Assembly: GCA_053919585.1 (NCBI GenBank)
Contig: CM132788.1
Reading direction: 5' to 3' (one strand)
DNA length: 64,000 nt
Origin: Euprymna scolopes
Taxonomy: Eukaryota
The translations under genes were made by a program, and so were the position numbers. Below the pieces are notes generated by a model. That model worked only from the letters and a program-made list of their open reading frames with translations. It searched no databases and had not been told where the DNA came from. Positions 4,637 through 62,040 of the stretch are shown in pieces (position 1 is the first letter of the stretch; every line of letters starts with the position of its first letter).

Positions 4637-4771
4637 GCTTACTTCTCAAGGTGTGCGTCTTAGGATTAAGAAAGAAAAAGAATCCAAGATGGCGCCTATA
4701 GTTTTTATAACATGGTCTTGCAAAGTCATACCACATGCATGCAAATGCGGGTTACCTGGGTTTTATAAAAG
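4637..4771. promoter_or_regulatory. Putative divergent Pol II promoter module, copy 1
   Basis: Plus strand: ATGCAAAT (4739-4746), 17 nt, TATAAAAG (4764-4771). Minus strand: TATAAAAA (4709-4702), YY1-like CGCCATCTTGG (4694-4684), donor GTAAGC (4642-4637). Confidence 0.55.
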
Positions 4772-5244
4772 CAGCTTGCATTGAGGTGGAAAAAAGCACG
4801 AGAAATCTTAATGATTGCTCATCACCTTGTTGGTTTACATTGAACTTTGGCACATGTGTTTGGACTGCTGGTACGATTTTTTGTGGAACTTTTAACGGAA
4901 AGATTTGAGAATTAATAGGTGGAATTTTTGTAAGGTGATTTGTAGCGTTTTTTATGAAGTAACTTATCGCTGACAGTTCCAATAGAGCATTTTTCCAGTG
5001 TGTTAAGCATCAATAAATAATTTAATCAGCTTTTTATTTTTAGTTCATTTGATGTCGCATCAAGTTGGAATTTTGGGAAAAAAATTTTTAAAACATTCTT
5101 AAAAAAAAAAAAAAAAAAAATTTACACATTTAACGTTTTGTATGTATTAATGATTTCTACAACCTGCGCCTCCACTTCTAGTATAATGCACTGTTCTAGG
5201 CAAGATTTAATTTTTTTATTTTCGTACTTGGGAGGGGTACTATC

Positions 5245-5420
5245 ACTTTAGGTAAGAATCAACCTGGAAATAATTCCAACTAATGAGTGAGACCAATTGG
5301 CTTTCAGGTGGAGTAAGTTCATTGCTTACTATCTCGGGTGCCCTGAGCAGGGAATGCTAACCGGGATGCTCAGGCAATTTTCTAGGCAAGAGTGCCTCTC
5401 CTTTAAGGAAGTTTTCTTTG
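5245..5420 (+). repeat. Unclassified dispersed repeat with splice-donor and Sm-like motifs, copy 1 of 4
   Basis: GGCTTTCAGGTGGAGTAAGTTCATTGCTTAC...GGGAATGC...TGCTCAGGCAATTTT...GAGTGCCTCTCC aligns with 19585-19770, 15815-15920 and 63580-63680. Confidence 0.7.
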
Positions 5421-5557
5421 AAAAAAAAAAAAAAAAAAAACTTTGCTTTCGAAAGTATTACAGACATTTCTAACCTGGAGATTTCCCAGTTGTAAGACCA
5501 AGAGATGAAGCAAATAAACTTGAACCAAACAGTGCTGATCGGGTCCCTATTAAATGC

Positions 5558-6158
5558 GACCTTCAACGCCTCGGAGTGGATATATGCTGCTTGCAGGAGA
5601 CCTACTTTATTCCTAGTGATTATCAGGATGTGCTGCTTAGAGACTCAGCTCTATTCAGCATATTTTGATGACCACTGGGGGGGGGGAGGAGAGGCTCCTG
5701 GCTAGTTAAGCACATTCTTAATGTGTCGTATGTCCTGGTATTTGTAAATCCTGAAAGAAGGCTGTGCATTGTAAATCTTACCATAAAGGATGTAGCATTT
5801 CGATTTATTAGGGTTTATGCACCCAATAACCATACTGAGCTGGTTTCTTTTGGAGGGGAGGCGGATTGAGCCCTGTATGAATACGTCCCATTGGACAGTT
5901 CTAGGAGACTGGAACGCGGTACTGGATGCCGATTTAGATCGGGGGGGGGGGGTTAACTCCCCCAGAACTACTAACCAGAACTGGGATGTTAAAGCATTGA
6001 GATTTTATCGACGAGCGATCTGGTCAATAAATTTTGAAATGCAAAAACCCGGAGACATAGTATGGATTTAGACAGGTAGATGCAGCTCTGATCCAGTTCA
6101 GCTCTCGAGTTATGTCGATCGGTTCTCCAAGTTTTCACAGTATAGTTTATTCAGATCA
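5558..6158 (+). pseudogene. Decayed APE endonuclease fragment of Tx1 family A
   Basis: Translates DLQRLGVDICCLQETYFIPSDYQDVLLRD, VLGDWNAVLDADLDRG, KPGDIVW and QLSSYVDRF, matching ORF 51781-52659; frameshifted. Confidence 0.9.
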
Positions 6159-6249
6159 GACTCTTTTGGAGCAATTTGCATAAGTGACTTAATGCCAATC
6201 ACCCACTATTACTTGAGAGGCTAGGTATAAAAAAAAAAAAATTTAACTT

Positions 6250-11600: not shown

Positions 11601-11609
11601 CAACTTGAA

Positions 11610-14600
11610 ATTGGAAGCGATTCAAAAGAAATGTTTAATCTTATTCGTTGTGGGCCGCCAGACAAAGTTACAAGAGCATCTATTGAAATTAACAATTTAC
11701 TGGTAACAGGATATCTGCAAGGAATTATAAAATGTAAAGGCTACAACACTTGGAACGCCTTGTTCAATACAATTAGAAACTCTGCAATATCTTAAAGTGA
11801 TGACTAACTACACCCTACAATCTGAATACATGGGAAAAAGGAGACCCACTATTTTGGCGTTTCAATTTCCGGACCACAGAGATCAGTACATTTCTCTTAA
11901 AATTGGAAAGATTGTTCCCATTCAACATAAATTGCATGAAATAGTCATTCGACATCATTCTAAACAAAGAAAACTCCAAAAATTCCATTCTTACTTGAAG
12001 TGGGGAAAGAACAATTTCCAATAATTGTAGTAGGCAGCCAGCCAACCTTCTGGTCTTATGGTGAGATTGGCTATCTCACTTCGGATTGGCCCCAGTGAAC
12101 CCAAAAATTGAGAGTATGGCAACATTTGGGGATACAGCCGATAGTAAAGGAACTCCGCAAGAAACTAAGGATGAGACCAAAGAGAACCCTGGTAAATTGT
12201 TCATGGAAAAAATAAAAACCCTGGCCGCCTGAGCTTTGAACAAATGCAGGAGGAGGCCATGTTAGAAAAGGACCCTGGCAGAGCTAAAAAAAAAAAAAAA
12301 AAAATGCACAAAAGATCAATCACCCCAATCCCTTTCCTAAACAAAGCCCAAAATTGCACCATAACTGAACCTCAGCAGTCGGACAAAATCAATAGCAAAA
12401 GCCATTCCTCCTCCCCCAGAAACAGCCTAAACTGATTCCTCTTAGCCCCATTAAACTAAATCTCGCTCTTCCCCTGTCCCTTCTACTTCTGCCACCCCCA
12501 TAATACTCCTGCATCCCTCACAAAGTCCCTACATGCACCACACCCCTATAGACACTGAAAACCCAGCAACCCCTAAGAACCCCTGGAAAAAAAAAACTAC
12601 CTCGACAAGGAAATCTGTAACAGTTGCACTCAAAATGAGCAACTATTTTAAATAGGTAGACCTTTCTAAGCTCATTGAATTCAGGGAAGTTGCTAGAAAG
12701 CCAATCGTGGACCCCAGCAATTTCCTGAAAGCTAAAAGAATAAGTTATTAAGAAAAAAGGAGGCAAAAGACTTACGGACTATGTTAGAAGCAAACAAAGC
12801 ATTTGAACTTTCACTTTTGGCTATTTTTAGAGAGTCAGACATCTGTAATTTATAAAAATCTTGTGTTGGGTGGGTCCCGGTAAAATGCATCCTTCCCTGT
12901 AAAGGATAGCCATATTAACATCTGTATGTTGGCAGTATCTCATGATGGGCTCACTGACTCAGATGGGTACCTATTTAGTCACGAGTCGTCAGCACATTAA
13001 CGACTGCAATGTTCGTTTTTGGTTCCCAACCCTAAGTCACCATACTGGATCTCAAGCTTACTTTAGGGCTAACTTGTGAAAATTTCGCTCAAGCTTGGAT
13101 CTACAGCACCTCTGAGTAAATATCTGTTGCTCACAAGAAACCCATCATTTCAGGTGACCATTTGGATGCCCTGTTTACGACATTGCACTTATTCAGCATA
13201 CTTGAATTCTCATTTGAGAAGTTTCTTGGCTAGTTAATTACTGGATGGATGTACTGTGTGACCACAAATTAAGGCATTCGTGAACCGTTTGTCATTTTCA
13301 GGAGTTTTTTTCCATGGAACCCAGTCTGTCATTAGAACAGTTCAACACCTACTTGGCTGACTTTTCATCTTTCGGTTACTGAAGCAGCTAGGTGCAAAAG
13401 GTAATATAGCAGAGGATGATGTCATTAAAGCCTTAAAGCAGATCGGCCTAAAGATTGATGGTCTGATCTATGAAATGTATTCGGTTGTTGCGCATCTTTG
13501 TTACCTTGTTAGTTTTAACTATTGGTTTTGGAACAGCTCAATCGCAATATTATATCATGGGCATTGTGAAGCTGTGCAAAAGCAAAGATAGTGGAGGTTA
13601 AATGTGATGAGAATTACTGGCTCTTAATGCTTAATGCTGTGTTAGATTTTGGCCAAGATTGCTTGTGCTAGGTAGTCTAAGCCCCGAGCAAACTTTTGGC
13701 TTGTAATTGCGCTTGTGGGTTCACTTCCTTAATGCAAACCCCACACTGATGAGGGAAGTAAATGACAAAGGATAGAGGCTATTCTGCTTATCTCAATCTA
13801 TTTTTCAAAGTTGTGCTTTGTCACAGATGCACTATATGCTTGTGTTTGAACATTTCCTTCGCAGACCAAGGGTGAATCTGGTCCTTTGTGATATCACTTT
13901 GCCAGACACTTCCTCCCTGGTAAAGTACTCCGCCTCTGCCGACAATGTAATGTGCAATGCTGAGATTAGTGTGATTAACATAGAAATCAGATTATATGAA
14001 GTGGTCACAGGCTAACATTAACTGTGACAAGGTGCCTGGACAGAAGTTTCCCATTCAGCTGGAGCGACAGGCTTTGCAAGATTCTCTGCATCTGGTTTGG
14101 TCCCCATCTTCAGCTGGAAAAATATTAGGGTTTTGAAAGTTGTTTGGTCCACAGCTAGTCTAGATTAGCAGGGAGAGTGGAGGTGTGCATACTGCACATC
14201 TATCCAATGTTTCCCTTTTTCTTAGATACATTGCTGTATTTGCAGCAGGCTCTTTTCCAGTTCTTGGGGTTGGAAAGGCCCCTATGGTCTGTCACTTATC
14301 CATCCTTCTGAAGGCGATCTGGGTATGCCAAATATGAAAATTCGTCTGCTCACACTTGATTGTCAGAGATGCAGGTTCCCTTTTGAAATTTTCATAATGT
14401 TTGTAATAAAGCGTTCAGGCCCACATTTTCGACTGGCAAATTAGATTATCTGCCACAGTTTAGTAATGGGGATGGGATCTTTTTACTAACATTTTAAATA
14501 ACATTGTGCATAAACCCCCCCCCCATTGCATATTTTCATATGGGGCTTAAGGTTATGTTTTTATGGTGACCGATGAAGGATTTATACGCTGATGGATGTA

Positions 14601-14740
14601 TAGTACGGATGCGGTATTGTGGTTATAGAGTGAAAGTAGGAACTAGCCAGCTTAGCTTAGTTAGCATTAGTTTGTCATGACCGTCCTCATTTTTGGTTTT
14701 GCACAATTTCTTAAATTTTGTATTTTTACGAAAATACATA
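11610..14740 (+). mobile_element. Decayed, internally deleted Tx1 family B copy (ORF1 remnant, ORF2 fragments, 3' UTR)
   Basis: KCKGYNTW, SEYMGKRR, QMQEEAMLEKDPG, ORF1 end GSQP* (~13035), VKYSASAD, HPSEGDLGMP. 14360-14740 matches the reverse complement of the B 3' UTR (54692-55140). Confidence 0.9.
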
Positions 14741-18008: not shown

Positions 18009-18041
<33 letters not shown>

Positions 18042-18094
18042 TGACCTACAGGAGACTAATTGGGTTAGCTTTTTAGCCAATCCATACAAACCTT

Positions 18095-40697: not shown

Positions 40698-43649
40698 CTT
40701 GTCAGTTTCCAATTGTTTTGAACTTATTAAATTAAAACAGTGTCAAATGAAAGGTGTGGTTCGAAATGTGAAACTCTTGCCACCTGTTTCATGCACAGAC
40801 ACTCATCAGCAGTTATCAATAGTCTGTCAAAACTGAAAGGAGCCTTTTTACTTGATAAAAATAGGTTCAATGCTACCAGATTATTTAGCCATCATTCTCA
40901 CGTCTTTTTAAGTGCCTATATTTAGGTTCTTCCTTATACAAGTTGACAATAACTGACATAGTAAAAGGTAGTTGCCTGGCTTATGGACTTAGCAGTTTCC
41001 ATCTGCACAAGGATAAGATTGGCAACCATGCAAGTTCCTAAAATTTAAAAATACAACGCCCCAAAAATAAACTTGAACTGAACACATTGTGCCAATTTTA
41101 GTAATTATTACAAAAGCCCCAAAAAGGATTCCGCCATTAATCATTTCAATGTTTAAGAGTATTTATCTCATCGAAACAAATTTGCTTACAAACTGAACAA
41201 GGAGTGGTTGACATGTAATGTTGCAAGGGGTGTATCCCAAGTAATACATTTCTTTCTCTTCTGCATGCCTGAATGTGCCAATGGGTTTTAAAATGTCTGC
41301 AATGCACCTCTAATGCAAAGCAATGTCCCAAACTCCTCCCCAACTTCAAGCAACCTGCTTTGTGGAGCCCGGCACACCATTTGCATGCGTGTAGCATGAC
41401 TTCAAGATCTGAGCCCGTTTGTTAAAACTTCACAAACGCAATCTTGGATCTCTTTTTGTCCTAACCCGCAGGAAAGACAGCCACAAGGGCGTTTTAAAGA
41501 TAGGCCGTTCCTATTTTCCCATATTGAACAAGGAGTGGTGGACAGGTGTCAAAGCAGCTGGTTGAGATGTGATGGTGAAGTTGGTAGTTGTGGGGAAATG
41601 TGATTGGGTTCTCTAGGGGACCTCTATTACTTACCACAATAGCTACTTTTGATGTCTAGTTCTTATGAATAATTTGAGGCTACTGTGAAGTGGTGTTATC
41701 CTACCTGGAGGAATATTGGTTCCATTGGATAAAAGTGGTAAGATCTCCCCTCCAGGTTGCTGTTCTGTCCTTTTGTCTTCTGTACTTTGATTTGGCATAC
41801 TCCATTGCCCTTATCAGTGTTCACTTCTCTCCCATACCTCCTCCTGTCCGTCTGGTCTCCTAGAATGGTCTTCAGTGGCCCTCAAATCCTGACATCTGAG
41901 GTTTATTTCCTCTGTCAGATGTATGTCGTCCTCTGATATGAGGATCGCAACTTGGGTAAGGATGTCGCCTTTTTTCTCCACTAGGTTTGAGGCTCTTACC
42001 CTGTTAATTAATATTTCTCCTGCACCGCGTCCCCCTTTCTGAAACCCAAGTAGTTGTAGCGGTCCAGGAGCTCCTTTTTCTGCCCAACAGACAACTGGAT
42101 TTTAAATTGTTTCTTCTGGGGTCTCTTGGGCAAAATAGAACGCTAGGACCATTTTGGTCATGGACTGGTAACTGGCCTCTGAAATGGCTGTGACACCACC
42201 CTCTGTAGAAAGGTCCGTACCATTGCTTACCTTTTCCTGCTTATACTGAGCTATGGCCATCCAGTATGAATCCCTTTTTTTTTTTTTTTTTTTTTTTTAA
42301 GGAATCTTTCATGCTTGTTCATTGCCGATGACTTTTTATTGGTTATTCAAAGCTGCCTCTACCTGATAAAAGTAGAGAGGGTGCTCTCAGCCACAATCAA
42401 GGGAATGCATTAGATGGCTGGAGGAAGACAGCACACCATTTATTCACCCAAACAAATTTGCTCAATTAATTATAGCCTGAACTCTGAACAATATGCGGTA
42501 ACGATTTTGACGGTTTTACATGCTGCAATGTTATTTCTGTAAGACTTTTTACCCTGTAAAAAGGGGTAACATTCTCCCCCCCCCCTCCCCAGAAAATGAA
42601 ACCACTTTAAGTTAGGTCAGAAAGGCCTCATCTGATCAATCAGTTGGTCATTTTATGCCATAGTACCTGTAAGATAATCTCTATATTCAATCTGGTTCTA
42701 AAATTCAAGCTTATTTTTCATTAATCAGAACTTTTCCTGATACAAGGAAGTGGTGGCTGAGGAGTAATTATTTCGAGAATAAAGCTTAACATTCAAGTAT
42801 TTTGAGAGTAATGTTCATATACTCTAAAACTTCGTTTAAGAGTAATGCTTTCTAAGAATATAAAATTATCCTTCATAATAGGACTCCATTAAACAATTTT
42901 ATTGGGCATTAATAAATCTCCAATAAGTGGTTGATGTATCCAAACCATAATTTAGCTGACTTTAGGAGTGTCTACAGAATGGCGATGTTGTAGAAACCAA
43001 ACTTGGTATAGGACATTATTCAGACATTGAATGGTGACCTCAATGTTAATCTTGTACAGTTGAACATTTGTAGACTACCTTTTAGTTAAAAACGTCAGCT
43101 TAGTTATTCCCTGTGGAATTTTTGCTTTCTACATTAAGACACCTGCATTCAAATATTGCTACATCAAGGGTCGTTCATCCCTTTGTTAATGGTATTACAG
43201 TATAAGTAAATGCAATGGGTCCAATTGTACTTGATCTCAACACTATCCATTCTTTAAGCCTCACTTATTTTACATATAATCTTGTAGGATATTAAACTTG
43301 TATAACATTGAACTTCGAGTGCATGTGATTATGTAAAACAAATTATTTCAGTATTTTATCAAGAAAACTGAAGGCAGATTGAAAGGGTCTTGCAACGAGA
43401 GTATTAGCAAAAACAAAGTATCTAGTTTGTCGTCAGATGCACTTATATAGGGTCTGAGCGTTTAGGTTCTAAAGTTGTCAATTCTTCAATCAACTCTGCC
43501 CAAACATCTTTGTAGGGAAGTGTCGGCCTGTGTAGATAGCTATCCAAGATAGTTGCAATGAATACAAACTTGACCTTTAGCTTCAAACTTAATCTCTACA
43601 ACTTACTGTCGTGCTAGGTGAGATTAAGTAAATAGGAAAGCTGTTTTTG

Positions 43650-44850
43650 CGCAAACTCAATGTGAAGAAATTGTATATAAGTATCTGTTGTTGCAAAAGA
43701 GTACACAAAACCTCAGCTCACTGCAGCAGACGTCCGTCAGTACTTTCACATCCGTCCCATCTGCTCCAGTGGCCTGTTTTTATAAAAGACAGTCCTCCAA
43801 ATTTGCATACGTGTGAGCACGAGATTCTATAAGACTGCATTGTTATACAAGGCCGCAGGTGCCATCTCGGACCCTTTTCAGCATCATGACGCTGTGTCAG
43901 CAAAGTGCACACCGAGGCCGTTTAAGAGGTAAGGCTGCATTCCCACAATTTTCGCCACATCGTCTTACGTCTAAGTTTTACCAAAGTAGAAACTAGTCAC
44001 TGTAGCGATATCGGAACTTTCCTAAATACAAGGATTGTAATCTCCAAGTAGGTGAACTTGCTTGTCATTTCAAAACTGTTCCATCAGAAACTTCATTAAA
44101 GAAAATTGGATTGGCGCATTGTCTTGGTGAAGTATCCAGTTCTCACCACATAGTGGTCTTCATTCCTAAGCGATACATATCTCAACAGATGCATTCTGCC
44201 TTTAACAATTGGCAACTCCATAGTACCAGCAGAGAACATGGCACCTCATATCATCACTCCTCCTCCACAACTAGCTCTCAGAAGACTCTGAAAGAATTTT
44301 TGCATCATGCCAGTAAAATTGAAGGTAATCGGGACCATCATGATTAAATTTCTGAGAACAAAACCTTGTTCCATTCATGGTCCCCACGTTGCCTCGGTTC
44401 CGATTCAGTCCGAAGAATTCTTTTACCCGTTGCTGAGCTAATACGTTTTGGATGACCAGCCGGATTTCTTAATCATTTAGGTTGCTCAAGTGTGCACTGC
44501 CTTAGACTTTCCAATTTTGTCTGCTATTATACGAATTAACTTGGATTCCTAAATGCCAAAATCTTCCCACATCCATTTCCGTTAATTTCTTGCCTTAACT
44601 CATTTGTAAAAACAAGGATTTATAGTGATATTTTGAACCGATTGTAAAGCGTTCTTCAGTTGTCACCAAAAAACAAAGCGGCATTGTTTTCAAATGAAAG
44701 TTTTAGACAAATTTAATTTACATATTAATGACTACATTTTCTTAGTCATGAAAATTAGTTGCATAAAATTCAGGAATTAGATGTTTAGGGTTTCTAATAC
44801 TGTATATAATTGATATAACAATGCCTCATAATTTTTAGTCACTCACACTA
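43650..44850 (-). mobile_element. Decayed Tc3-like (IS630-Tc1-mariner) transposon
   Basis: Minus strand: KKLTEMDVG...IADKIGKSK near 44600, WNKVLFSE..FNHDGPD (compare FSDEKKFNLDGPDG), GGGVMI*GA. TIR-like TA-TAGTGTGAGTGACTAAAAATTATGAG at 44850. Interrupted at ~43930-44130 by an RT-like fragment (KFTYL). Confidence 0.7.
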
Positions 44851-46920: not shown

Positions 46921-47073
46921 CGCCGACTGTTCCTTTTACCGCTTTTATGCATCTTGCATAATCTAATTTGCATAGTTTGTATCATATGATCGTCAAATAC
47001 AAAAGCGACGTCGCCATTTTGTTTCCCCGCTCCTTAAGCGAATGAACCCGATACCTACGCTAATCAGGTAAGC
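46921..47073. promoter_or_regulatory. Putative divergent Pol II promoter module, copy 2
   Basis: Minus strand: ATGCAAAT (46973-46966), 16 nt, CATAAAAG, then AGTCGGC. Plus strand: TACAAAAG, CGCCATTTTG (47012), CAG|GTAAGC (47068). Confidence 0.55.
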
Positions 47074-47264
47074 TATGATTTTTTCCCTACAATCTTCTAA
47101 CGAAACCTTTGATAATACATGCATTGTATATGTATAATTACTCATGAGCCGCTAGGTTAAGCCATTATCACTTTAATTCGTTGCAAAATTCATAAACTGG
47201 CATGTTATCAGATCAGGCTGTAAGAAGATACTGGCTTCCTGACCTAGAATGCACTAAACTTTTA

Positions 47265-48887: not shown

Positions 48888-48903
48888 ACAATTTGAAGGA
48901 CAC
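48888..48903 (-). other. 16-bp target motif / TSD, copy 3 (GTGTCCTTCAAATTGT)
   Basis: Immediately follows the 3' end of element A; 15/16 identical to 54676-54691 and 61837-61852. Confidence 0.85.
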
Positions 48904-49529
48904 GAAATTTATTTTATTTAGCAAAAAATTTTTACAAAATAAAAATGTGGCACAAGGCCGAAAAAGGGGGATGGAGGTTAATGTTGACCTAACTAACATA
49001 ACGTTAACTTAACTAGACTTTTTCACCAAAATACCAGAATCACTCTGTGGACATCCTACTTTAACCCCGCAAGTTACAAATATATATACATGATGTGAGG
49101 GGTTGGGGATAAAAATCTTATTTACAAAATCGGATGAAAAAATATACAATGATAAAAAGTGGTTAGTAAAAAGAACCCCCTCACTACTAATTGTGGCGGA
49201 TAAAAAGTTTTGTGAGTCGAAAAGATGTAGGTCCCACGAAAACTAACTTTATTCAAACACAACAAAAATGGCCTACATCGCTGGCAAAACAGTTTATCCG
49301 TCACCTAAAGGGCTGGGATTGGGGATTATCGAACCAAAAGCGGGGGGAAAAAAAAACAAAAAAACGGACGCTGGGACAGGGAAAACCAAAAAAGGGATTG
49401 GGACGATGACAACACGCATACTCTAGCTAAGTTAAAAATCAAACAAAAATGCCTAACTAGCCTACTCTAGGAGGTCCGATGCATGTCTGTTTGATCAGGT
49501 CACCCAAAATCCTTAAAAAAACCTAAGCA

Positions 49530-52500: not shown

Positions 52501-52659
52501 TCTAAGGAGCACGTCATGATAGTCACTTGGAATAAAGTGAGTCTCCTGTAGACAACATACATCCACACCAAGGCGTTGAAGGTCGCGTGCAACTCGAAGT
52601 TTACGAGAGGCGTCCCTCAACCCTCGGACATTTAAGCTAGCTAATCTTAAAGAAGCCAT
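49530..52659 (-). pseudogene. Family A ORF2 (APE endonuclease, reverse transcriptase, C-terminal Zn motif), frameshifted
   Basis: LASLNVRGL, CLQETH, GDWN, IDRF, YSDH; PGIDG, FQPLTMLN, YADD; C..CGE..EDLDHAFFHC. Split over ORFs 51781-52659, 50661-51695, 50149-50700 and 49946-50419. Confidence 0.95.
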
Positions 52660-52669
52660 CTTGAGCTAC

Positions 52670-54511
52670 TTAGGGTTGGGAATCCTGAACAAACATAGAC
52701 GGTGTCAAGATACTGACAGCAGTCCCCATAGACCCAGTGGTCATCTCAGTGGTGATGGACCCGTCTGGGGACAAACCGCCAATATCTAATGGAAATGTTA
52801 GTTTGAGGGCCCTATATAAAGATGGATGAACCTTTATGGGGACCCGCCCAACACATGCCTTTTTGATTTCAGTTAAATCTTTATCATTAAAAAAAGCAGC
52901 TGGAGGAAAAATGTTATATGCTGAATTTGCTTCCTCCAGCATATACCATAAGCCTATGGCTTCTTCCCGGTTTCTTACAACCGTAAGAAGCCTTCTTGCA
53001 GTTTTCTGGGTTCACTACAAGTTTTTTTTACTGTTTTAAATGCATAAAGTGCCCTATAGTCTTTTCTATTATGATTGTTCATGAGTTTCCTGTTCCGGGG
53101 TAATTTTGTAGACGTTCTTGCCTGTATAGTAGGGGAGCTTTTTTTTCCGGGATTCAGCTTCCGTAGAGGGACTTCGGGGCCTTTTTTCCCCCCCGGGGTC
53201 GCAGGAGGCAAGGGAGCAGGCGGGGGAGGAGGGGGAGGCATATCAGTTTTCATTGGGGAAAGGGGAGGGGTATTTTGAGGGGTGTTACAGGGGGTTTTAA
53301 AAGGGGATGGTTTGGGTGATTTTTTGGGGGGGGCAAGCGTTGTCATTTTTTTTTCTCTTTTTGGCAATGCTGTAGTGACAGGTGGGGGTAATGTCTTAGC
53401 TGGGGATGGACGTGTTTTTGTTGGAAGAGTCGGGAAAGAGTCGGAAAGGTTTGGTTTCTTTTTTTTTCGGTTTTGCGATCTTGGTCTAGTCGGTCTTTTA
53501 GTTTGCTTAAAACTTTAAATTTGTTGCCTCCTGGATCCTTTGAACACATTGCTTCTATTCTATCCTTCTCCAGGCTTTGTGCATAAGACTTTGGGGATGA
53601 AAGTTTTTTATTTTTCACCAATGTCCATTCTTGAGCTTTAGCTGGCGATTCCTTTGTTGTATTGCACAATTGCTCGAATTGGTCTAGTGAGAGTCTCTTG
53701 ATTGGACTTGCGTGAGTGCTTGTGACGGGAGGAGTATTGGTAGAGTCTTATGTGGCGTAACTGTACCCTATTTTGGTTGTCTGTTGCGGGCTTCGAATTG
53801 TTTGCGTTCTTTTGGGGCATGTGAAAGTGAGGTGCCCTACCTCTCCACATATCCAGCATGCTGGGCGGCGTCCGGCTACCACTAGTGGTAGTTTGTCTTC
53901 TCCTGCTTCAATATAAGGAATTTTACTGAAAGCTTCCTTATTCAGTAAAATTTCAAAAGTCCATGTTCCCTGGAAACTATCCAAATTAACACCTGTTATT
54001 TCTCCAAATTGGAGAAACGCACATAAATATTCACCAGGGACAGTCACTGGAACCTCAAAAACTGAAACTGTTGTTCTTCTTCTTCCCATGTATTCCATTC
54101 TTAATATGTGGTCTTTAGTAATAATTTCCTGTTTGGACATATTAATGCATTCCTCCTCGGTCTTGAATAGGGAATTCCAGGTGTTGTAGCCCTTACATTT
54201 CGTTATCCTTTCAGGTCTCAAGCCTGTTGTCGCGATTAGCTTTGCCACTTGTTCTTCTGTTGAACGAATTAACTTTGTCTTTCTGTCTACAACAAAGAGA
54301 AGGATAGTTTTTTGGTGATCTCTTCCAACTTTTGAAGATCCAGCTTGACACCTTTATCTGTGACAAATTCCGCACACAGCTTAGCTTTCTCAATGAAATC
54401 TTTCACGTCGATTTTTATGGCTGGAGGCTTTGTCCAACCCTGCTTTTCCATGTTATCATTGGGATTCATGTTTGGTAAAGTTTCCATCGGCGTCCCGGTG
54501 GCTGCCGCCAT
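52670..54511 (-). pseudogene. Family A ORF1 (nucleic-acid-binding protein), frameshifted
   Basis: Starts MAAATG; probable RRM-like region; CWICGEVGHLTFTC knuckle; Pro/Lys-rich linker; C-terminal block ending DSQP*; homologous to B ORF1. Confidence 0.9.
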
Positions 54512-54675
54512 CGCCGGTGGAAGCAGAAAGGAAAAATAACAGTCTTATAACAAGTAACGTAGGAGGAAGAGAAGAGAGAGGAATAACAAATTTAACAACA
54601 ATGTATAACAATAATAATAATAACAGCGCAATAAATATCGGATACGAACCACAAGAGTGATAATCAAAAGCGACC

Positions 54676-54691
54676 ACAATTTGCAGGACAC
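54676..54691 (-). other. 16-bp target motif / TSD, copy 2 (GTGTCCTGCAAATTGT)
   Basis: The only sequence separating the 3' end of B from the 5' UTR of A. Confidence 0.9.
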
Positions 54692-56398
54692 AGTATTTAT
54701 TTTCGGAAAATTTACAAAGTAAAAATCAGAAAAATTTGGCACAAGGCCGAAGATGGGGAAGGGGAAAGGACGGTCTTCTCAGACTAGTGCTAACTAATCT
54801 AACCTAACTAGTTCCTACTTTCACTCTACTTACACCATAATACCACATTCATACTATACATCCATCAGCGTATACATCCTTCATCAATTACCATAAGAAC
54901 ATCATGCCATGATAACCTAATTAAAACCCATAAGAAAGGGGGGTTTGGGAAGATAAAAATTTTATATACAAAATACAAATGAAGTATTTACAATGTTAGT
55001 AACACAAGACCCCCCCCCCCGTTGTTAAACTATGGCAGATGCACTGATTCGCCAGTCGAAAGGGTGATGCAGGTCCAAACACTTTATTTAAAGCACCTCT
55101 TACGAAAACTTCGAAAGGGAACCCGCATCTCTGGCGAATCAAGCGATCTGTCACCTAATTTGGGAGGGGAGTGGGGTTAGAAAAAAAAAAAAACTTAAAA
55201 GGGGCCTAATGATCGCTATCACACACTAGCTAGGTTATGAACAAAGAAGCCTAAATAATGGTCCTACTCTTGCCTATATCGTGACCTATTCTGGACTAAA
55301 AACGAGTCAGGGCTGACGTTCGTTCCTGTCACCCAAAATTCTTCTTCCTAAGGAACATCCAAGAACCAGTCAAGACTTGCTTCTCTCACCCGACACACAC
55401 GCGCAACTGACACCCACCTTTCAACAAAGTCTGACGGAGAGAGTCTAACTCTCTCGGCCTTGATACGATCCTTTAAATAATGACGGAAGAGTCGTATAAG
55501 GTCGAGGGGAGCGAAGTCCTCAGATCCATAGACCACTTTCATATGTGTGTTCCAGATAACACCTCTCATCACAGCTAGCAAGGTCAAACACAAATCTTTT
55601 CTGAGCCTATCCGTTGTCGGAGCCCAATTGCTACAGACATTAATAGGAACCAAGGTTAATGAGGATGTTTTTAGTATGCGGACCATGAGACCTGTAACAA
55701 ACTCAATCAGCGGCGCCACGATGCGACAAACGAAGGCGTGACAAAGTCTCGTCCTCATCGCCGCACCGTTTACAAATAGGCGAGTCCACCAAGCCAGCTG
55801 AGTGGAGTCTCTTACCGACCCAGAGAGCATCCCGAATTACCAGCCAGGTCAGGGAAGCCTCGTCGTTAGTGAGGCATCCTGACCCAAGGCCAGATTGAGC
55901 GGAGCTGCTCCTTCGCCAAAGGGAGCCTCTCACCGACGACATCCGTTACAGATCCCCTCACTAAAACCCGATATAATGCCTTTCGGGACAACAGCAGAGT
56001 GTTAGAGAGGCTTTCCTTCACTCTTAAGAGGGACTTCAGTGCGCGCCGGCACTCGCGGTAGAAGGGACATTCACCTCGGGGCAACCTGTGTGCCTCCCCC
56101 TCGGAGTAGTGCACCCCTCTCAAAGCCGGGAAGGCTTTCTTGGTGTCCTCCATCCAGAGGCAACCGTTTTCCCTATCTTGTGTGCACATTCGATCTAGAT
56201 AGAGCCGTAGCGTGTATAGCCGAATCTCCACTTTTGGCATACCTAGACCGCCTTCAGAAGGATGTAGGTAGCAGACATCGCGACAGACCTTAGGGGCCCT
56301 TCTAAGCCATAAGAAGTTGAAAAGAGCCCTCTGCAAATATAGCAGTATATCTGACGGGATTGGAAGCACTGATAGACGATAAATAGCGATTGGATATA

Positions 56399-58023
56399 CA
56401 GTGATGATCATATTTATTGGCACGGTAAAATAAAAGTTAAATTTTGTCTAATAAATTCTAAAAAAGGGATTAAATTAAAGAAAATAACAAAGTATATTAT
56501 GTATTTTTAACTGGCCTTTCCAATGCAGCAATCGGATTTTAGAAAAAATAAATAACAAAGGAACAACAAACATAATTGCAAAAAACCCTTGTTCAAAATT
56601 ATTGGCACGATTTATTTAATAATCAATTGTATAGCCTTTGGCCTTGATTACCTTCCTCAGTCGCTTTTCATAGTTTACAACCAAGTTGTTGCCCTCTTCA
56701 GTAGTAATTTTAGCCCACTCTTCCTGACAATAATCCTCCAATTGAATAAGATTCTTAGGCTTCCTTTGCATTACCCTCAATTTTAATGTTCTCCATAAAT
56801 TTTCAATTGGATTAAGGTCTGGGCTTTGTGATGGCCACTCCAAAACATTAATATGATTGTCCTCAAGCCATTTCTTAGTCAGTTTAGCCGAATGCTTTGG
56901 GTCATTATCTTGCATGAACCACCAACGACGACCAAGTGAGAGCTCTTTAGCAGAGTCTTTCAGGTTTTCATCCAATATTTTAACATAATCTTCCTTTTTT
57001 ATGCTACCTGTGACCTTAACAAGTCGCCCTGGTCCAGAGGCAGCAAAGGATCCCAAAAACATCAAACTGCCTCCACCATGCTTCACTGTGGGTATGGTGT
57101 TCTTAGGCAGGAAAGCTTCGCCAGATTTTCTGTAAATATAAGACACTTTATTATGGCCAAATAACTCTATTTTCGTTTCGTCAGTCCATAGAACACGTTT
57201 CCAGAATGCAACATCTTTATCAATATGACGTTTTGCAAAGGCTAGCCTTGCTTTCAGGTGCATAGGCTTCAATAAGGGAGTCTTTCTCGGACGACATGCT
57301 TTTAAACCAGCTCTCTTCAAAACTCTACCAACTGTATGTCAAGATACATTCACTCCAGAGGTGCTCTGTTCATCAACAATCTCCCCAACAGAGATCCTTG
57401 GGTTTTGTTTTACTTGTCGAACAATTTTCCGTTCATCTCTTGGAAAGAATTCTTTTTCTCCCTCTACCCTCTAAACTCATAACGTGGCCTTGCGATTTGA
57501 ACTTGTTTATTATGGCTCTAACAGTGGATTTGGGAAGGTTTAGCTTCTTTGAAATCTTATCATAGCCCTCCCCATTGGTATGGCATGCTATAACAAGCTT
57601 CCTGACGTCTTCGCTGTGTTCCTTAGTTTTAACCATGGCGATTGAAAATTATAATTTAGTCACTTATAATAGTTTAAATAAATCGCTATCTAAAAATTAT
57701 CTGAAAAATTATTCACTGAATTAGCGTTAAACAAGCATAATATGGCTATAAAAAAGTTCAGAAAGCACGTAAACCGGAAATTGATATTATACTGATACTA
57801 AAAGAAAAACAAAGCCGTGCCAATAATTTTGAACAAGGGTTTTTTGCAATTATGTTTGTTGTTCCTTTGTTATTTATTTTTTCTAAAATCCGATTGCTGC
57901 ATCGGAAAGGCCAGTTAAAAATACATAATATACTTTGTTATTTTCTTTAATTTAATCCCTTTTTTGGAATTTATTAGACAAAATTTAACTTATTTTACCG
58001 TGCCAATAATATGATCATCACTG
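56399..58023 (-). mobile_element. Tc1 DNA transposon (DD34E) with ~210-bp IR/DR-type TIRs and TA TSD
   Basis: TA|CAGTG...CACTG|TA; TIRs 56399-56609 and 57816-58023, each bounded by direct repeats of TTATTGGCACG. Confidence 0.97.
56616..57636 (-). pseudogene. Tc1 transposase with one frameshift (~57440) and one in-frame TGA (~57340)
   Basis: MVKTKEHSEDVRK HTH start, GRKR NLS-like segment, WTDETK, QDNDPKH, SPDLNPIENLW; 34 residues between the second D and E. Confidence 0.95.
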
Positions 58024-59887
58024 TATGTGGGTATTACACACCTCCGCTCTCCCCTTTAATGAAATGTTTCTACTGATCCACTGAAGCTGCAGACCGTACC
58101 ACTTTCAGAACCTCCGACCAATTTTTCTCCAGCTCGAGGTCAGGACCAAACCAGACGCCGAGTATCTTGCAAGGCCCATCGCTCCAACTGAAGGGGCATA
58201 CCCCTCCAGGCACCAATGCGCAAACCCGAAGACTTGTCGCAGTTAATTTTGGCCCCTGTTACCGTTTCATACAATCTGATTTCTACACCGACGACACTAA
58301 TCTCAGCACTGCTCGTTACAAGCACAGTTACGTCGTCGGCATAGGTGGAGTACTTCGCCTGGGCATCCGCACCTGGCAAAGTGATTCCGCGTAGAACCGG
58401 ATTCACCCTTAGCCTGCGCAAAAATGGTTCGATCGCAAGCACATATAGCATGGGTGATAACGGGCACCCCTTGACGAATGGACCGTGACAAACTGAAGGG
58501 TCTCGACCTCTTCCCATTTACTTCCACCATCACCGCGGGGTTAGCATAGAGAAGATGAACCCAAGAGCGAAATTGCGGCTTCGGTCGTCGAAAGACGAGA
58601 AAAGTCAGCCAAATAGGTGTCGAACTGTTCTAATGACAGACCGGGTTCCATGGAAAAAAGCTCCTGGAAATGGGATCTAAACGCCTCCAACACACCCTGG
58701 TTTGTGGTCACGGTACGCCCGTCCGGCAATGTGACACGAGCGATGTGCCTATCAGCCGCTTGCCTAAGCTCCTCTGCATGCAGTTCAGCGGCCATGTTTG
58801 TTGCTTCCTGGAGCATTCTTTTTAACCTAGCCCTAATCGCTAAGGCTTGGTGCTCCTTTTCAGCAAAGGAGGCAAGCCGAGCCCTAATTATATTAACGCT
58901 AGCACTATCCCCGTCCTCCACCGCCCGATCTAGTCTAGAGCCTAGTGTCACTTTAGCTGCCCTAGAATCTAGATTGAGTCTTTTGCTAAAGTCAGCAGCA
59001 AAGGACCTAATGGCTTCCTTAACTTTTACTCACCACTTATTCCCAATAATTGCCCCCGTCAATTCCCGCTGTAGGGTTAGTAATAGTCCGTCATGGAAGC
59101 CCTTCACATCGAACAACGACGTGTTGAGCTTCCAGTAACCGGCTAATCTAGGCTTAGGTCTATCTAAGTTTACCCGTACACGAACAAGTCTGTGATCCGA
59201 GTAAACTATATTGTGGAAACTTGGACAATCCAATACTCCTACATCGACTCACCTAACTAAGAACCGGTCGATATAGCTCAAGCGCTGTATCGAATCGGAG
59301 CCGCCTCTACCTGTCCAAGTCCACACTAAGTCACGGGGCTTTTCATTTCGGAACTTGTCGATAAGATCAAACTTATTCACGAAATAAAACGGCATCCCGA
59401 TCTCTGTTAGTTCCCCTAGATGTTAACCCAAATCGATCTAACTCGGGATCCAGGACGGCGTTCCAGTCTCTCGCTAAGATAACCATTCTAACATCTATGA
59501 ACTGCTCCATCCGCCGAAAAAAAACCAGCCAGCTCAGAATGGCTATTGGGCGCATAAACCCCAATAAGACGTAATGCCCTACCCTTTATGGTAACATCCA
59601 AAACACAGTCTTCCCTCCGGATCCAAGTAAGACGGGTCACACGACGCATCTAGAGACCTTTTAACTAGCCAGGAAACCCCTCTCGAGCGAGAATTATAGT
59701 GCGCTGAGTAAGCCTCAAAGGTCTTAGACAGTGCACCCAAATGGTCACCAGGAATAAGATGGGTTTCCTGCACACAACATATATCCACTCCGAGGTGCTG
59801 CAGGTCCAAACTCAAGCGCCATTTGCGCGAGTCGGCCCTTAGCCCTCGGACATTTAAACTAGCAAGCTTGAGATCCATGGTGGTGCC

Positions 59888-61641
59888 TTAGGGTTGGGAA
59901 CCAGGAACGAACATCGCGGTCGTGAGCATGCCGACGGCTCTCGTGAGGGAATAAGTACCCATCGCAGTATCGATGAGGCCGTCACGAGAGATACCACCGA
60001 CATGCAAAGGATAGGTTAGTTTTGCTATCCTATATAGGGAGGGGTGCATTTTTACCGGGATCCTCCCAACACAACATTTTTTAAGGTTTTTTATGTCGCT
60101 ATCTTTAAACACAAGGGGAGTGGGGAGGTTGAAGGCTTTATTTGCCTCTTCGAACATTAGCCAAAGATCCTTGGCCTCTTCTTTTTTCCGAACAACGGTT
60201 AAGATTCTTTTGGCATTTGGAAAATTAGCAGGGGTATCTACTAGTTTCCCCCCCCCACCTCCTTGAACTCAATTAGTTTTGTGAGGTCGGTTCCTTTAAA
60301 GTTCTTGTGGTTGTTAATAGCGGCTTGGTTTATTATGCAAATGTCTTTGCCAGGGAGGTAGAGAGTCTTTTTCTTGTGTTCAGGCGAGGGGGTGATGTCC
60401 ATTGCAGAATGTGTGTTTTTAGGAGATGCAAGGGGAGTGTTGTGAGTGGTCGCAGAGGTGGATGGAATGGGAGAGGAGGGTTTGTGTTTTTTTTGAAAGG
60501 CTTAAGGGTGTTAGTTTAGGCTGTTTATAAGGGACCGGAGTTGTAACTGGAGAAGGCATTTTGAGGGGGGAAGGAGTTATTGGCTTTGTAGGAGACTGGG
60601 TGATAGGGTTGGTTAGGGATTTGGGGCTTGGTTTCGGAGAAGTGGGTTTACATGGGGATTTGGGTGATGGGCGTTGAGCATCTAATTTCTTTTTTAATTT
60701 GACGACTTCGAGATATTTTTCTTTTCCGGGGTCATTTTGCAGCATTGCCTGTTCTTTCATTTGGTCCAGGCTCAGGCGTCCAGGGGTTTTTCTCCCAGGG
60801 GCGATTTGCCAGGGTTCTCCCCTGAGGATTTCGTCTGTTTCGTTGGTAGGCGGCTTGGGAACACTTTTTGATGAGGATCCCAAGTGTTGTCCAATGGATT
60901 TTTTGGTGTTTGGAGGAGGTTTTTTTAAGGGGCATTCTGACGTGAGGTGGCCAATTTCGCTGCAATTCCAGCATGTCGGTCTTCGGCCAGCCACTATTAT
61001 AGGGAGTTTCTCCTCTCCCGCCTCGGAAGAAAGGGATCGCATCGAAGTTTGCCTTATCGAGGAGGATGTCGTATGACCATATGCCATGAAACTCGTCCAC
61101 CTGCACCGAAACCATTTCGCCATATTTTAGAAGGAAGGCGCCGATGTGTTCTCCTTCAATGTGGTGAGATACATTAAAAACGGACACAGTAGTCCGACGT
61201 TTTCCCATATATTCTGATCTTAGAATATAGTTTTGAGTGATTATCTCTTTTTGTGAGATAGTTAGGCAGTCTTCTGGGGAGTTAAAAAGTACACTCCATG
61301 TGTTGTAGCCCTTGCACTTGACGATGCGCAAAGGTCTAAAACCAGCTGTAGCCAAAAGGTTGGTGATGATATCTGTGCTTGCTCTTATTACTTTTTTTAA
61401 CTTTCTGTCGACTATAAATATAGTCAGACACTTTTTTTTGGATTTCCTCCAACCTTGGCACGTTGACGATTAATCCTTTGTCGGTGACAAGTTCCAGGCA
61501 TTGTTTTGCCTTTTCAATAAATTCGTTGACGTTGATATCCACTTTCGGTGGTTTGGTCGAAGTGTTTGGCGTAGCAGTAGTGCCGTTTTCCGCTTCCAAG
61601 ATGTCGACGACAATGGGCGTTTGGCTCGCCGAAGCGGCCAT
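59888..61641 (-). pseudogene. Family B ORF1, frameshifted
   Basis: Starts MAASASQ; KCKGYNTW, SEYMGKRR, CWNCSEIGHLTSEC, SP/KP-rich linker, C-terminal block ending GSQP*. Confidence 0.9.
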
Positions 61642-61836
61642 AGCCGAACCATTAAAAAAAGACGTTTAAAAGAAAGTCCAAAAAAACAACTGTTAAAAAT
61701 AACAGTAAGACAAATGAAAGAAAAAAAAAGCGTCGTGTAGAGAAAAAAAATCCGACGGTAATAAAAATAAAAGGGTAAAAATCACTGATAGAATAACGCA
61801 CGAGACAAGAGTCAAAAGCAACTTGAAATCACAAAG

Positions 61837-61852
61837 ACAATTTGCAGGACAC
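61837..61852 (-). other. 16-bp target motif / TSD, copy 1 (GTGTCCTGCAAATTGT)
   Basis: Directly precedes the B 5' UTR and follows a predicted initiator (GGCA+1GT, A at 61853). Confidence 0.9.
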
Positions 61853-62040
61853 TGCCGACTCGTCTCTAGCCTCCTGCTTTAATAGTTGACGGGAATTATC
61901 CATTTGCATAATCACATGAGAAAGAAACGTGATTTTCCCAGAGTTGCATGGGGGTAAACGCTCATAAAAACCCCCGGACGCCATCTTGGAATTCTCTTTT
62001 CCCCCCAACCGGTGACACAACAGACGTACCCGAGGTAAGC
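61853..62040. promoter_or_regulatory. Putative divergent Pol II promoter module, copy 3 (points into the Tx1 tandem)
   Basis: Minus strand: ATGCAAAT (61909-61902), 17 nt, TATTAAAG (first T 61884), AGTCGGC, CAGT with A at 61853. Plus strand: CATAAAAA (61963), CGCCATCTTGG (61979), GAG|GTAAGC (62035). Confidence 0.6.

What the first reader, a model, noticed from the sequence alone, without database searches (positions are those of the whole stretch)
4637..62040. A divergent octamer/TATA/YY1/splice-donor module repeated three times with conserved spacing but little conservation between motifs
Seen at 4637-4771, 46921-47073 and 61853-62040. One direction: ATGCAAAT, then 17/16/17 nt, then a TATA-like octamer ending in AAAG followed by C. 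Other direction: TATA-like box, 7/6/8 nt, CGCCAT(C/T)TTG, then GTAAGC 52/56/56 nt from the start of the YY1 motif. Two copies also share AGTCGGC before the predicted start. Motif-only conservation suggests selection rather than a decaying transposon. No coding exons were found downstream. Inference: promoters of a non-coding multigene family, such as lncRNA or piRNA precursors in this transposon graveyard. The octamer-TATA pairing recalls histone H2B promoters, but no histone ORF is present.
Basis: partly seen in the sequence, partly recalled or inferred. Interest (0 to 1): 0.75.

Follow-up and report, generated by a model that had tools for sequence, protein, structure and literature searches.

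The report
Repeated promoter and leader-exon cassette
A roughly 170-base control cassette (octamer, TATA-like box, YY1-like box, pyrimidine start site, short non-coding exon with a splice donor) occurs six times in this cephalopod window; it looks like a family of duplicated gene starts kept by selection, but whether and what it transcribes could not be tested.

Summary
The spaced grammar occurs 3 times against 0.015-0.13 expected by chance.

A profile built from those three copies finds three more: c4 near 41.4 kb, c5 near 43.8 kb and c6 near 9.1 kb. c4 and c6 have mutated YY1 boxes and lost donors. Two copies face left and four face right. Spacing is 2-4.4 kb once a 13-kb Tx1 LINE stack is removed.

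Between the motifs the copies are no more alike than shuffled sequence, and the flanks share nothing. A decaying transposon or a recent duplication is therefore unlikely.

The geometry fits a Pol II promoter:
- a TATA-like box about 30 nt before a TOP/TCT-like pyrimidine initiator;
- the YY1-like box between them;
- a 38-43 nt non-coding leader exon;
- a consensus donor;
- a conserved TTCCC block.

The octamer/TATA "other direction" has no conserved product.

I read these as duplicated alternative or independent promoter-leader cassettes driving outward transcription. The product is unknown: a distant coding gene, a lncRNA or a piRNA precursor.

This scan noted comparable promoter-leader cassettes at protocadherin genes elsewhere in this genome.

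The parts
4623..4774 (-). Module c1, intact. CTGCTTTTATA 4774-4764; ATTTGCAT 4746-4739; TATA-like 4710-4701; CGCCATCTTGG 4694-4684; pyrimidine initiator 4682-4670; GTAAGC 4642-4637; TTTTCCCA 4630-4623.
4643..4680 (-). Predicted non-coding leader exon of c1 (38 nt). It runs from the C in TTC+1TTTTTC, about 30 nt after the TATA-like T, to the donor GAA|GTAAGC. Inferred, not mapped.
   Evidence: initiator consensus from PMC554972
9051..9189 (-). Module c6, degenerate. CAGCTTTTATG is kept; the octamer is replaced by ATCACGTA; the YY1 box reads GGTCATCTTTT; the donor is lost.
41355..41521 (+). Module c4, degenerate. CTGCTTTGTGG; ATTTGCAT intact; TTAAAAC; CGCAATCTTGG (C to A); donor position reads ATAGGC; TTTTCCCA is kept.
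43774..43945 (+). Module c5, largely intact. CTGTTTTTATA; ATTTGCAT; TATACAAG-type box; TGCCATCTCGG; CCCTTTTC; GAG|GTAAGG; ATTCCCA.
46939..47088 (+). Module c2, intact. CCGCTTTTATG; ATTTGCAT 46966-46973; ATACAAAAG 46997-47005; CGCCATTTTG 47012-47021; pyrimidine tract 47022-47035; CAG|GTAAGC 47068-47073; TTTTCCCT 47081-47088.
47025..47067 (+). Predicted leader exon of c2 (about 43 nt). The start is inferred and the initiator match is only partial.
61874..62052 (+). Module c3, intact. CTGCTTTAATA; ATTTGCAT 61902-61909; an extra 25 nt with a Staf/ZNF143-like TTCCCAGAGTTGCATGGGG; CATAAAAAC 61963-61971; CGCCATCTTGG 61979-61989; TTCTCTTTTCC 61992-62002; GAG|GTAAGC 62035-62040; TTTCCCCT 62045-62052.
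61994..62034 (+). Predicted leader exon of c3 (41 nt). It starts at the C of TTC+1TCTTTTC, a full match to (Y)2C+1TY(T)2(Y)3.
   Evidence: PMC554972
48888..61852 (-). Context, not part of the module. Two stacked Tx1-type LINEs, with a nested Tc1/mariner, separated by the 16-mer GTGTCCTGCAAATTGT at 61837-61852, 54676-54691 and 48888-48903. The stack begins 1-2 nt after the TSS predicted on the octamer side of c3. Without the stack, c2 and c3 are about 2.0 kb apart.
46922..46928 (-). AGTCGGC heptamer 12 nt after the CATAAAAGC box of c2. The same heptamer lies 15 nt after the box of c3, at 61854-61860.

Best explanation
The six modules are paralogous copies of one RNA polymerase II promoter-plus-leader-exon cassette. 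They were spread locally by old tandem and inverted duplication of a 2-4 kb unit.

Proposed mechanism, all inferred from sequence:
1. A POU/octamer site and a CTGCTTTTATA block lie about 85-120 nt upstream.
2. A TATA-like box fixes initiation about 30 nt downstream, at a C inside a pyrimidine tract (a TOP/TCT-type initiator).
3. A YY1-like box, CGCCATCTTGG, fills positions -17 to -7.
4. The transcript opens with a 38-43 nt non-coding exon that ends in a consensus donor.
5. A conserved TTCCC element follows the donor.

c1, c2, c3 and probably c5 are still under selection. c4 and c6 are dead copies.

The two left-facing and four right-facing cassettes would start long spliced transcripts that run outward through transposon-rich DNA. 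They act either as alternative first exons of genes beyond the window ends, or as starts of non-coding precursor RNAs.

Shown here: homology, motif-only conservation, conserved spacing, and the absence of any coding or RNA-family sequence.

Inferred only: the transcription start, donor use, direction and product.
For: - The grammar is far above chance.
- A profile of c1-c3 independently recovers c4-c6, and a six-copy profile finds nothing else in the window.
- Motifs are 70-93% identical while spacers equal shuffled controls. Spacings are conserved: 13-17, 38-69, 41-58 and 3-8 nt.
- The two degenerate copies carry point changes exactly in the YY1 box and the donor, as dead paralogues would.
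- The TATA-like T lies 29-31 nt before a C that matches the ribosomal-protein/TOP initiator consensus (Y)2C+1TY(T)2(Y)3 in c1 and c3 (consensus from PMC554972).
- Donors are CAG|GTAAGC, GAG|GTAAGC, GAA|GTAAGC and GAG|GTAAGG.
- No conserved sequence exists on either flank, at DNA or peptide level. The duplicated and retained unit is therefore just promoter plus exon 1.
- The intact copies are the outermost ones of each array (c1; c2 and c3), and the decayed ones are innermost (c6; c4).
- The LINE and DNA-transposon copies that lie inside the proposed outward transcripts are all antisense to them: 94-718 and 5528-6188 on +; the Tx1 stack and Tc1 on -.
- Earlier notes of this scan report comparable promoter-leader cassettes at protocadherin genes of the same genome (not tested here).
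Against: - There is no expression, chromatin or start-site evidence of any kind.
- No acceptor or downstream exon was identified.
- CpG observed/expected is raised only at c2 (98th percentile) and mildly at c3. It is not raised at c1.
- The YY1-like box lies upstream of the predicted start. In mammalian ribosomal-protein promoters YY1 sites lie downstream.
- The initiator match in c2 is partial.
- Genome-wide copy number is unknown, because this genome could not be searched.
- The antisense-transposon count is small (about 4-5 events, two of them in one stack). Two short SINE-like pieces at 62393-62575 and 63922-64000 are in sense orientation.
Confidence: 0.55

Rival explanations
1. One reading: compact bidirectional promoters of a non-coding family, in particular the entry points of a piRNA or lncRNA cluster. 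The YY1/TOP side fires outward and the octamer/TATA side fires inward, and transposon remnants are turned into antisense small RNAs. This overlaps the best explanation as one of its two product options.
For: - No coding sequence lies on either side.
- The window is mostly transposon debris.
- All six Tx1 copies point towards the window centre: + in the left half, - in the right half. The proposed outward transcripts would therefore carry them antisense.
- This matches unistrand clusters, which have discrete promoters, are spliced, and hold antisense transposon remnants (PMC10643416).
- Octamer-N16/17-TATA spacing is strictly kept in c1-c3.
Against: - Antisense LINEs are equally expected in introns of ordinary genes.
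- The Tx1 copies at 11.6-14.7 kb and 19.9-23.1 kb lie between the two arrays, outside any YY1-side transcript.
- The octamer side has no conserved initiator, donor or product.
- No small-RNA data could be consulted.
Confidence: 0.22
2. The cassette belongs to a mobile element. It might be the promoter-bearing 5' end of a LINE, LTR or other repeat family, for example an L1-style internal promoter with a YY1 box read in the octamer direction. The motifs would then be kept by selection on the element, not on the host.
For: - On the octamer strand the box reads CCAAGATGGCG, the orientation of the L1 5'UTR YY1 site (my own knowledge).
- A full-length Tx1 starts directly after the octamer-side start of c3.
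- Six copies in 64 kb of transposon-rich DNA.
Against: - Tx1_B and the four older Tx1 copies have no module in front of them. c2, c4 and c5 have no Tx1-like sequence behind them.
- The Tx1 piece near c1 is an isolated endonuclease fragment behind an unrelated SINE.
- The copies share no termini, flanks or body.
- Neutral copies this diverged could not keep 8-11-mers intact.
- A related Tx1 locus from a public assembly has no module.
Confidence: 0.13
3. The modules are promoters of small RNA genes: snRNA-type or Pol III type-3 (a PSE/octamer plus TATA at rigid spacing), spliced-leader RNA genes, or a snoRNA host.
For: - Rigid 16-17 nt octamer-TATA spacing.
- Tx1-clade LINEs typically home to small RNA genes, and one sits at +2 of the octamer-side start of c3.
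- A short exon followed by a donor resembles a spliced-leader RNA.
- A TOP-like start resembles the non-coding snoRNA host genes gas5 and U17HG.
Against: - Rfam finds no family at gathering score. Only chance-level hits appear near the modules.
- The sequences downstream of the octamer side are unrelated.
- The leader exons are not conserved and no Sm site follows the donor, so these are not SL RNA genes.
- Only one weak C/D-box-like candidate exists (45205-45272), and a single such match in 128 kb of scanned strand may be chance.
Confidence: 0.05
4. The modules are non-transcribed cis-elements (enhancer or insulator clusters), or a chance co-occurrence of common motifs.
For: No direct evidence of transcription was obtained.
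Against: - Chance is excluded.
- A conserved consensus donor at a fixed distance, and TATA-to-initiator geometry, are not expected of enhancers.
Confidence: 0.05

Closest known systems
Ribosomal-protein / 5'TOP gene promoters, including the non-coding snoRNA host genes gas5 and U17HG (Perry 2005, PMC554972)
   Same: - A TATA or A/T-rich box at about -25/-30.
- A start at a C inside a pyrimidine tract matching (Y)2C+1TY(T)2(Y)3.
- A YY1 site close to the start.
- A very short first exon that separates the control sequences from the body.
- Little conservation beyond about 200 bp.
   Different: - The YY1-like box lies between TATA and the start, not downstream of the start.
- No GABP or Sp1 sites were noted.
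- There are six clustered paralogous copies instead of single-copy genes.
- No translation-related gene or snoRNA was found downstream.
- The start site is unmapped.
Histone H2B (and divergent H2A-H2B) octamer-TATA promoters
   Same: An ATTTGCAT/ATGCAAAT octamer lies a fixed 16-17 nt from a TATA-type box, within a compact region that could fire both ways.
   Different: - There is no histone ORF and no histone 3' stem-loop anywhere in the window.
- The sequence downstream of the box is not conserved between copies.
Promoter and non-coding leader-exon cassettes of clustered protocadherin genes in this same genome (earlier notes s1-259195 and s1-244856); vertebrate clustered Pcdh/UGT1A variable first-exon arrays
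   Same: - A short conserved promoter/leader module repeated in tandem in one orientation.
- A YY1-like motif and, in c3, a Staf/ZNF143-like motif.
- Spacers that are free to diverge.
   Different: - No coding exon follows any copy here.
- The leader is about 40 nt rather than about 310 nt.
- The motif set differs (octamer, TATA-like box, TOP-like initiator).
- There are two arrays in opposite orientation.
Promoters of unistrand or bidirectional piRNA clusters (Drosophila flamenco-type, PMC10643416; mouse pachytene clusters)
   Same: - A discrete Pol II promoter.
- A spliced precursor.
- A transposon graveyard whose LINE copies lie antisense to the proposed transcript.
- Two arms transcribed away from each other.
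   Different: - No small-RNA evidence.
- Several duplicated promoters per arm.
- A different motif set (no Ci or A-MYB type site identified).
LINE-1 5'UTR internal promoter with YY1 box
   Same: A CAAGATGGC-type YY1 box lies close to a transcription start. A LINE sits directly next to one copy.
   Different: - The cassette is not part of the Tx1 elements of this window.
- It has a TATA-like box and a splice donor.

Membership tests
TOP/TCT-type Pol II promoter | Transcription starts at a C within (Y)2C+1TY(T)2(Y)3, about 25-30 nt after a TATA or A/T-rich box | tested here: inconclusive
   The sequence geometry fits in c1 (C at 4680) and c3 (C at 61994). It is partial in c2, c4 and c5 (consensus). 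The actual start site is unmapped.
TOP/TCT-type Pol II promoter | Drives a gene of the translation apparatus or a snoRNA host transcript | tested here: not met
   No coding exon and no Rfam snoRNA lies downstream within the window. There is one weak C/D-like candidate only. Exons beyond the window cannot be excluded.
Histone H2B-type octamer/TATA promoter | Octamer 10-20 nt upstream of the TATA box | tested here: met
   16-17 nt in c1-c3.
Histone H2B-type octamer/TATA promoter | A histone ORF and a 3' stem-loop downstream | tested here: not met
   No histone-like ORF appears among the 107 ORFs of at least 75 aa. No histone 3' element was found at Rfam gathering score.
Transposable element (LTR, TIR, SINE, or LINE 5' end) | Copies align end to end, with shared termini, flanking body, or target-site duplications | tested here: not met
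   Only about 170-200 bp are alignable, and the spacers are saturated. No flank similarity at DNA or peptide level. There is no consistent link to Tx1 bodies.
Transposable element (LTR, TIR, SINE, or LINE 5' end) | High, dispersed genome-wide copy number | not testable with these tools
   This genome is not in any searchable collection. A metagenome pattern scan gave only chance-level hits. The one related locus I fetched has no module.
snRNA-type / Pol III type-3 small RNA gene | A conserved small RNA immediately downstream of PSE/TATA | tested here: not met
   The downstream 350 nt are unrelated between copies. No Rfam hit.
Spliced-leader RNA gene | A conserved leader exon followed by a donor and an Sm site | tested here: not met
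   The leader exons are at background identity. No RAUUUUGR-type Sm site follows the donor.
piRNA cluster promoter | Strand-biased 24-32 nt small RNAs arising downstream | not testable with these tools
piRNA cluster promoter | Transposon remnants predominantly antisense to the precursor | tested here: inconclusive
   The Tx1 and Tc1 copies inside the proposed units are all antisense. But these are few events, two SINE-like pieces are in sense orientation, and the same bias occurs in ordinary introns.
Alternative first-exon array of a flanking gene | All the donors splice to one common downstream acceptor or exon | not testable with these tools
   A common exon would lie outside the window, and no reads were available.

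The most novel reading that the evidence does not exclude
The window is the core of a cephalopod bidirectional non-coding (piRNA-type) cluster. Its two arms are each launched by an array of duplicated TATA/YY1/TOP-like promoters with a spliced leader exon. A site-specific Tx1 LINE has landed at the inward-facing octamer/TATA start of one cassette and may borrow it for its own transcription.
Probability: 0.15. Interest if true: 0.75.

Novelty: new variant of a known kind. Interest (0 to 1): 0.45.

Why it matters
If the cassettes are active, they give a compact, sequence-defined core promoter for a cephalopod: an octamer, a TATA-like box, a YY1-like box, a TOP-like initiator, and a leader exon with a donor. 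Almost no cephalopod promoters have been dissected, and usable promoters are needed for transgenesis.

The array form raises a testable question. Promoter plus exon 1 was duplicated without any gene body. Three or four live copies sit beside dead ones. This could be promoter choice among alternative leaders, or multiple entry points into a transposon-rich precursor RNA.

It also bears on how a site-specific LINE may exploit a host start site.

If the cassettes are inactive, this is only a small relic family.

Tried and rejected
- **Rfam and tRNA scans.** Rfam at gathering score over the whole window and ARAGORN found nothing. E-value scans around the modules gave only chance-level hits, plus a U2-like piece and a 5S-like piece that are repeats.
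- **Coding exons.** ORF lists, Pfam on 29 ORFs, and tblastx between the six inter-module units found no conserved peptide.
- **Coding on the opposite strand.** I tested a start at the ATG inside CCAAGATGGCG. The ORFs are only 11 aa (c2), 31 aa (c1) and about 50 aa (c3), and the spacer length differences are not multiples of three. Rejected.
- **Flank homology.** blastn with word size 7 and Smith-Waterman against shuffles found none on either side.
- **snoRNA host idea.** One C/D-like candidate only.
- **Module as the Tx1 5' end.** Rejected by mapping all Tx1 pieces.
- **Extending beyond the window or sampling the genome.** The window's ORF is not on record. The word search found only a 92%-identical 1-kb Logan contig and relatives of about 55% identity in ENA. 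One fetched locus has no module.
- **Metagenome pattern scan.** Five loci, three of them independent. These are chance-level hits that do not share the rest of the cassette.
- **CpG-island test.** Inconsistent between copies.
- **Literature.** Searches found no description of this motif set in cephalopods.
Full report
**Observation**

- In c1 (4637-4774, minus-oriented), c2 (46939-47088) and c3 (61874-62052) an ATGCAAAT octamer lies 17, 16 and 17 nt from TATAAAAG, CATAAAAG and TATTAAAG, each followed by C.
- On the other strand a TATA-like box lies 7, 6 and 8 nt before CGCCAT(C/T)TTG. GTAAGC begins 52, 56 and 56 nt after the start of that box.
- AGTCGGC is shared by c2 and c3.

Against 200 second-order Markov shuffles:

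| Pattern | Found | Expected |
|---|---|---|
| CGCCATYTTG | 4 | 0.2 |
| Octamer-N20-90-GCCATYTT | 3 | 0.015 |
| GCCATYTT-N35-60-GTAAG | 3 | 0.13 |

**The family is larger than reported**

An nhmmer profile built from c1-c3 alone recovers three further copies (read):
- 41341-41523 (+), E 8.5e-9
- 43772-43943 (+), E 3.7e-6
- 9192-9090 (-), E 2.5e-4

A six-copy profile finds nothing more in the window.
- c5 (43.8 kb) keeps most features: CTGTTTTTATA, ATTTGCAT, a TATACAAG box, TGCCATCTCGG and GAG|GTAAGG.
- c4 (41.4 kb) keeps the octamer and the post-donor block. Its YY1 box reads CGCAATCTTGG and its donor position reads ATAGGC.
- c6 (9.1 kb) is further decayed.

c6 and c1 face left. c4, c5, c2 and c3 face right.

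The spacings are 4.4 kb on the left, and 2.4, 3.2 and 2.0 kb on the right. The last figure is taken after removing the 12.9-kb Tx1 stack at 48888-61852.

A fourth CGCCATCTTG at 23403 has no octamer or donor. It lies in the decayed tail of a Tx1 copy, and I take it for chance.

**Nature of the conservation**

I anchored the copies on five blocks: CTGCTTTTATA, ATTTGCAT, CGCCATCTTGG, GTAAGC and TTTTCCCA.
- The blocks are 70-93% identical between copies.
- The spacers are 0.50-0.59 identical, which equals shuffled controls for most pairs. Only c1-c4 stands out, at z = 5.
- Spacing is kept: 13-17, 38-69, 41-58 and 3-8 nt.

The blocks were chosen because they are conserved, so the contrast is somewhat inflated. 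The independent recovery of c4-c6 and the chance calculations do not depend on that choice.

Nothing outside about 200 bp is shared.
- blastn with word size 7 and tblastx between the six downstream units gave only low-complexity hits.
- Smith-Waterman scores of the 350 nt on the octamer side equal shuffles.

This rules out a recent segmental duplication and a neutrally decaying transposon. It is the pattern expected of old paralogous regulatory elements with live and dead members.

**Anatomy and proposed mechanism**

On the YY1 side the geometry is that of a TATA-directed Pol II promoter.
- In c3 the T of CATAAAAAC lies about 30 nt before the C of TTC+1TCTTTTC (61994).
- In c1 the T of TATAAAAAC lies about 30 nt before the C of TTC+1TTTTTC (4680).
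- Both match the ribosomal-protein/TOP initiator consensus (Y)2C+1TY(T)2(Y)3 (PMC554972).
- c4 and c5 match in part, and c2 less well.
- The YY1-like box then occupies about -17 to -7.
- The block CGCCATCTTGGAWTCTCTTTTYC is the longest conserved stretch.

The predicted first exon is 38-43 nt.
- It has no ATG in c1 and c3.
- It ends in CAG|GTAAGC, GAG|GTAAGC, GAA|GTAAGC or GAG|GTAAGG.
- A TTYCCCWAYA block follows 3-8 nt later.

Upstream lie the octamer and, 13-17 nt further, CTGCTTTTATA. Between the octamer and the TATA-like box several copies carry E-box/ACGTG-like sequences. c3 has an extra 25 nt with a Staf/ZNF143-like TTCCCAGAGTTGCATGGGG.

All of this is inference from sequence. No transcription start or splice was observed.

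**The "other direction"**

The octamer-N16/17-TATA arrangement is real and H2B-like. But what follows it differs in every copy, and no histone ORF, histone 3' element or small RNA is present.

The block is as well explained as an upstream element of the YY1-side promoter. Divergent initiation remains possible and untested.

**What the cassettes drive**

- No coding exon, conserved peptide, tRNA or Rfam family lies in any unit.
- The ATG inside CCAAGATGGCG on the opposite strand opens ORFs of only 11 aa (c2), 31 aa (c1) and about 50 aa (c3).
- Same-orientation cassettes are only 2-3 kb apart with nothing conserved between them. The duplicated and retained unit is therefore promoter plus exon 1.

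Two versions fit:
- (a) Alternative leader exons that splice to genes lying beyond the two ends of the window.
- (b) Independent starts of non-coding precursors.

In favour of outward transcription in either version:
- The intact copies are the outer ones of each array.
- The LINE and DNA-transposon copies inside the proposed transcripts are all antisense to them. These are Tx1 pieces at 94-718 and 5528-6188 on +, and the Tx1 stack with its nested Tc1/mariner on -.
- That bias is known both for introns and for unistrand piRNA clusters, which have discrete promoters and are spliced (PMC10643416). It therefore does not separate (a) from (b).
- The number of events is small.

**Relation to the Tx1 LINEs**

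The stack begins 1-2 nt after the start predicted on the octamer side of c3. It is punctuated by GTGTCCTGCAAATTGT three times.

The cassette is not part of Tx1.
- Tx1_B and the four older + strand copies (94-718, 5528-6188, 11607-14700, 19944-23063) have no cassette in front of them.
- c2, c4 and c5 have no Tx1 behind them.
- The Tx1 fragment near c1 sits behind an unrelated poly(A)-tailed SINE.

Whether Tx1_A borrows the c3 octamer/TATA start is open. That question belongs to a neighbouring finding.

**Comparison with known systems**

- The closest functional analogue is the TOP/ribosomal-protein promoter type, which includes the non-coding hosts gas5 and U17HG. It differs in the position of the YY1 box and in copy number, and no such gene was found here.
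- The arrangement resembles the promoter-leader cassettes that earlier notes of this scan report for protocadherin genes of this genome, which those notes call a cephalopod. I did not test those notes. They differ in motifs, in leader length and in having coding exons.
- Membership in the H2B-promoter, snRNA/Pol III, SL-RNA and transposon classes fails on tested features.

**Limits**

- The genome is not in the searchable collections.
- A metagenome scan for the grammar gave only chance-level hits.
- CpG observed/expected is inconsistent between copies.
- Literature searches found no prior description of this motif set in cephalopods.

**Verdict**

This is a real six-member family of promoter/leader-exon-like cassettes kept by selection. 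It most likely supplies duplicated Pol II starts for outward, spliced transcripts.

The product and the activity are unknown. Interest is moderate, and it would be higher if the piRNA-cluster or promoter-choice versions are confirmed.

Noticed in passing
window 48888-61852 (16-mers at 61837-61852, 54676-54691, 48888-48903, minus strand): Two different Tx1-type LINEs are stacked head to tail, with a Tc1/mariner nested in one of them. They are separated by the same 16-mer, GTGTCCTGCAAATTGT. The upstream junction falls at +2 of the TATA-predicted start on the octamer side of module c3.
   Followed up: partly
window 94-718, 5528-6188, 11607-14700, 19944-23063 (all +): Four older Tx1 copies or fragments lie in the left half, all on the + strand, while the two young copies in the right half are on -. 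Two of the old copies end just before ACCCC(C)ATTA (near 720 and 14741), a flank different from the 16-mer beside the young copies.
   Followed up: partly
window 62393-62575 (+): A decayed U2 snRNA-like sequence (Rfam U2, 26.7 bits, E 0.008, below gathering score). It fits the U2-headed SINE family reported in earlier notes on this genome.
   Followed up: no
window 63922-64000 (+) and 40575-40633 (+): A 5S rRNA-like sequence cut by the window end (Rfam 5S, 32.5 bits, E 0.0003). A 79%-identical 61-nt relative lies at 40.6 kb. These are probably 5S-derived SINE copies or 5S pseudogenes.
   Followed up: no
window 45205-45272 (+): The only sequence in the window with a C box (GTGATGA), a D' and a D box (CTGA) and a 5-bp terminal stem. 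It lies in sense orientation between c5 and c2. It may be chance, and rRNA complementarity was not checked.
   Followed up: no
window 2219-2632 (+): A 138-aa open frame with a weak match to cytochrome b558 alpha / p22phox (Pfam PF05038, E 0.003, 17.6 bits, below the cut-off of 25). It has no match among solved structures. It may be a decayed retrocopy or spurious.
   Followed up: partly
window 5299-5440 (+) and 19649-19763 (+): Two copies of a short repeat, 73% identical. The first ends in a 20-nt poly(A), so this looks like a SINE. Long poly(A)/poly(T) runs recur at about ten places in the window.
   Followed up: no
window 61925-61943 (+): c3 alone carries a Staf/ZNF143-like TTCCCAGAGTTGCATGGGG between the octamer and the TATA-like box.
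   Followed up: no
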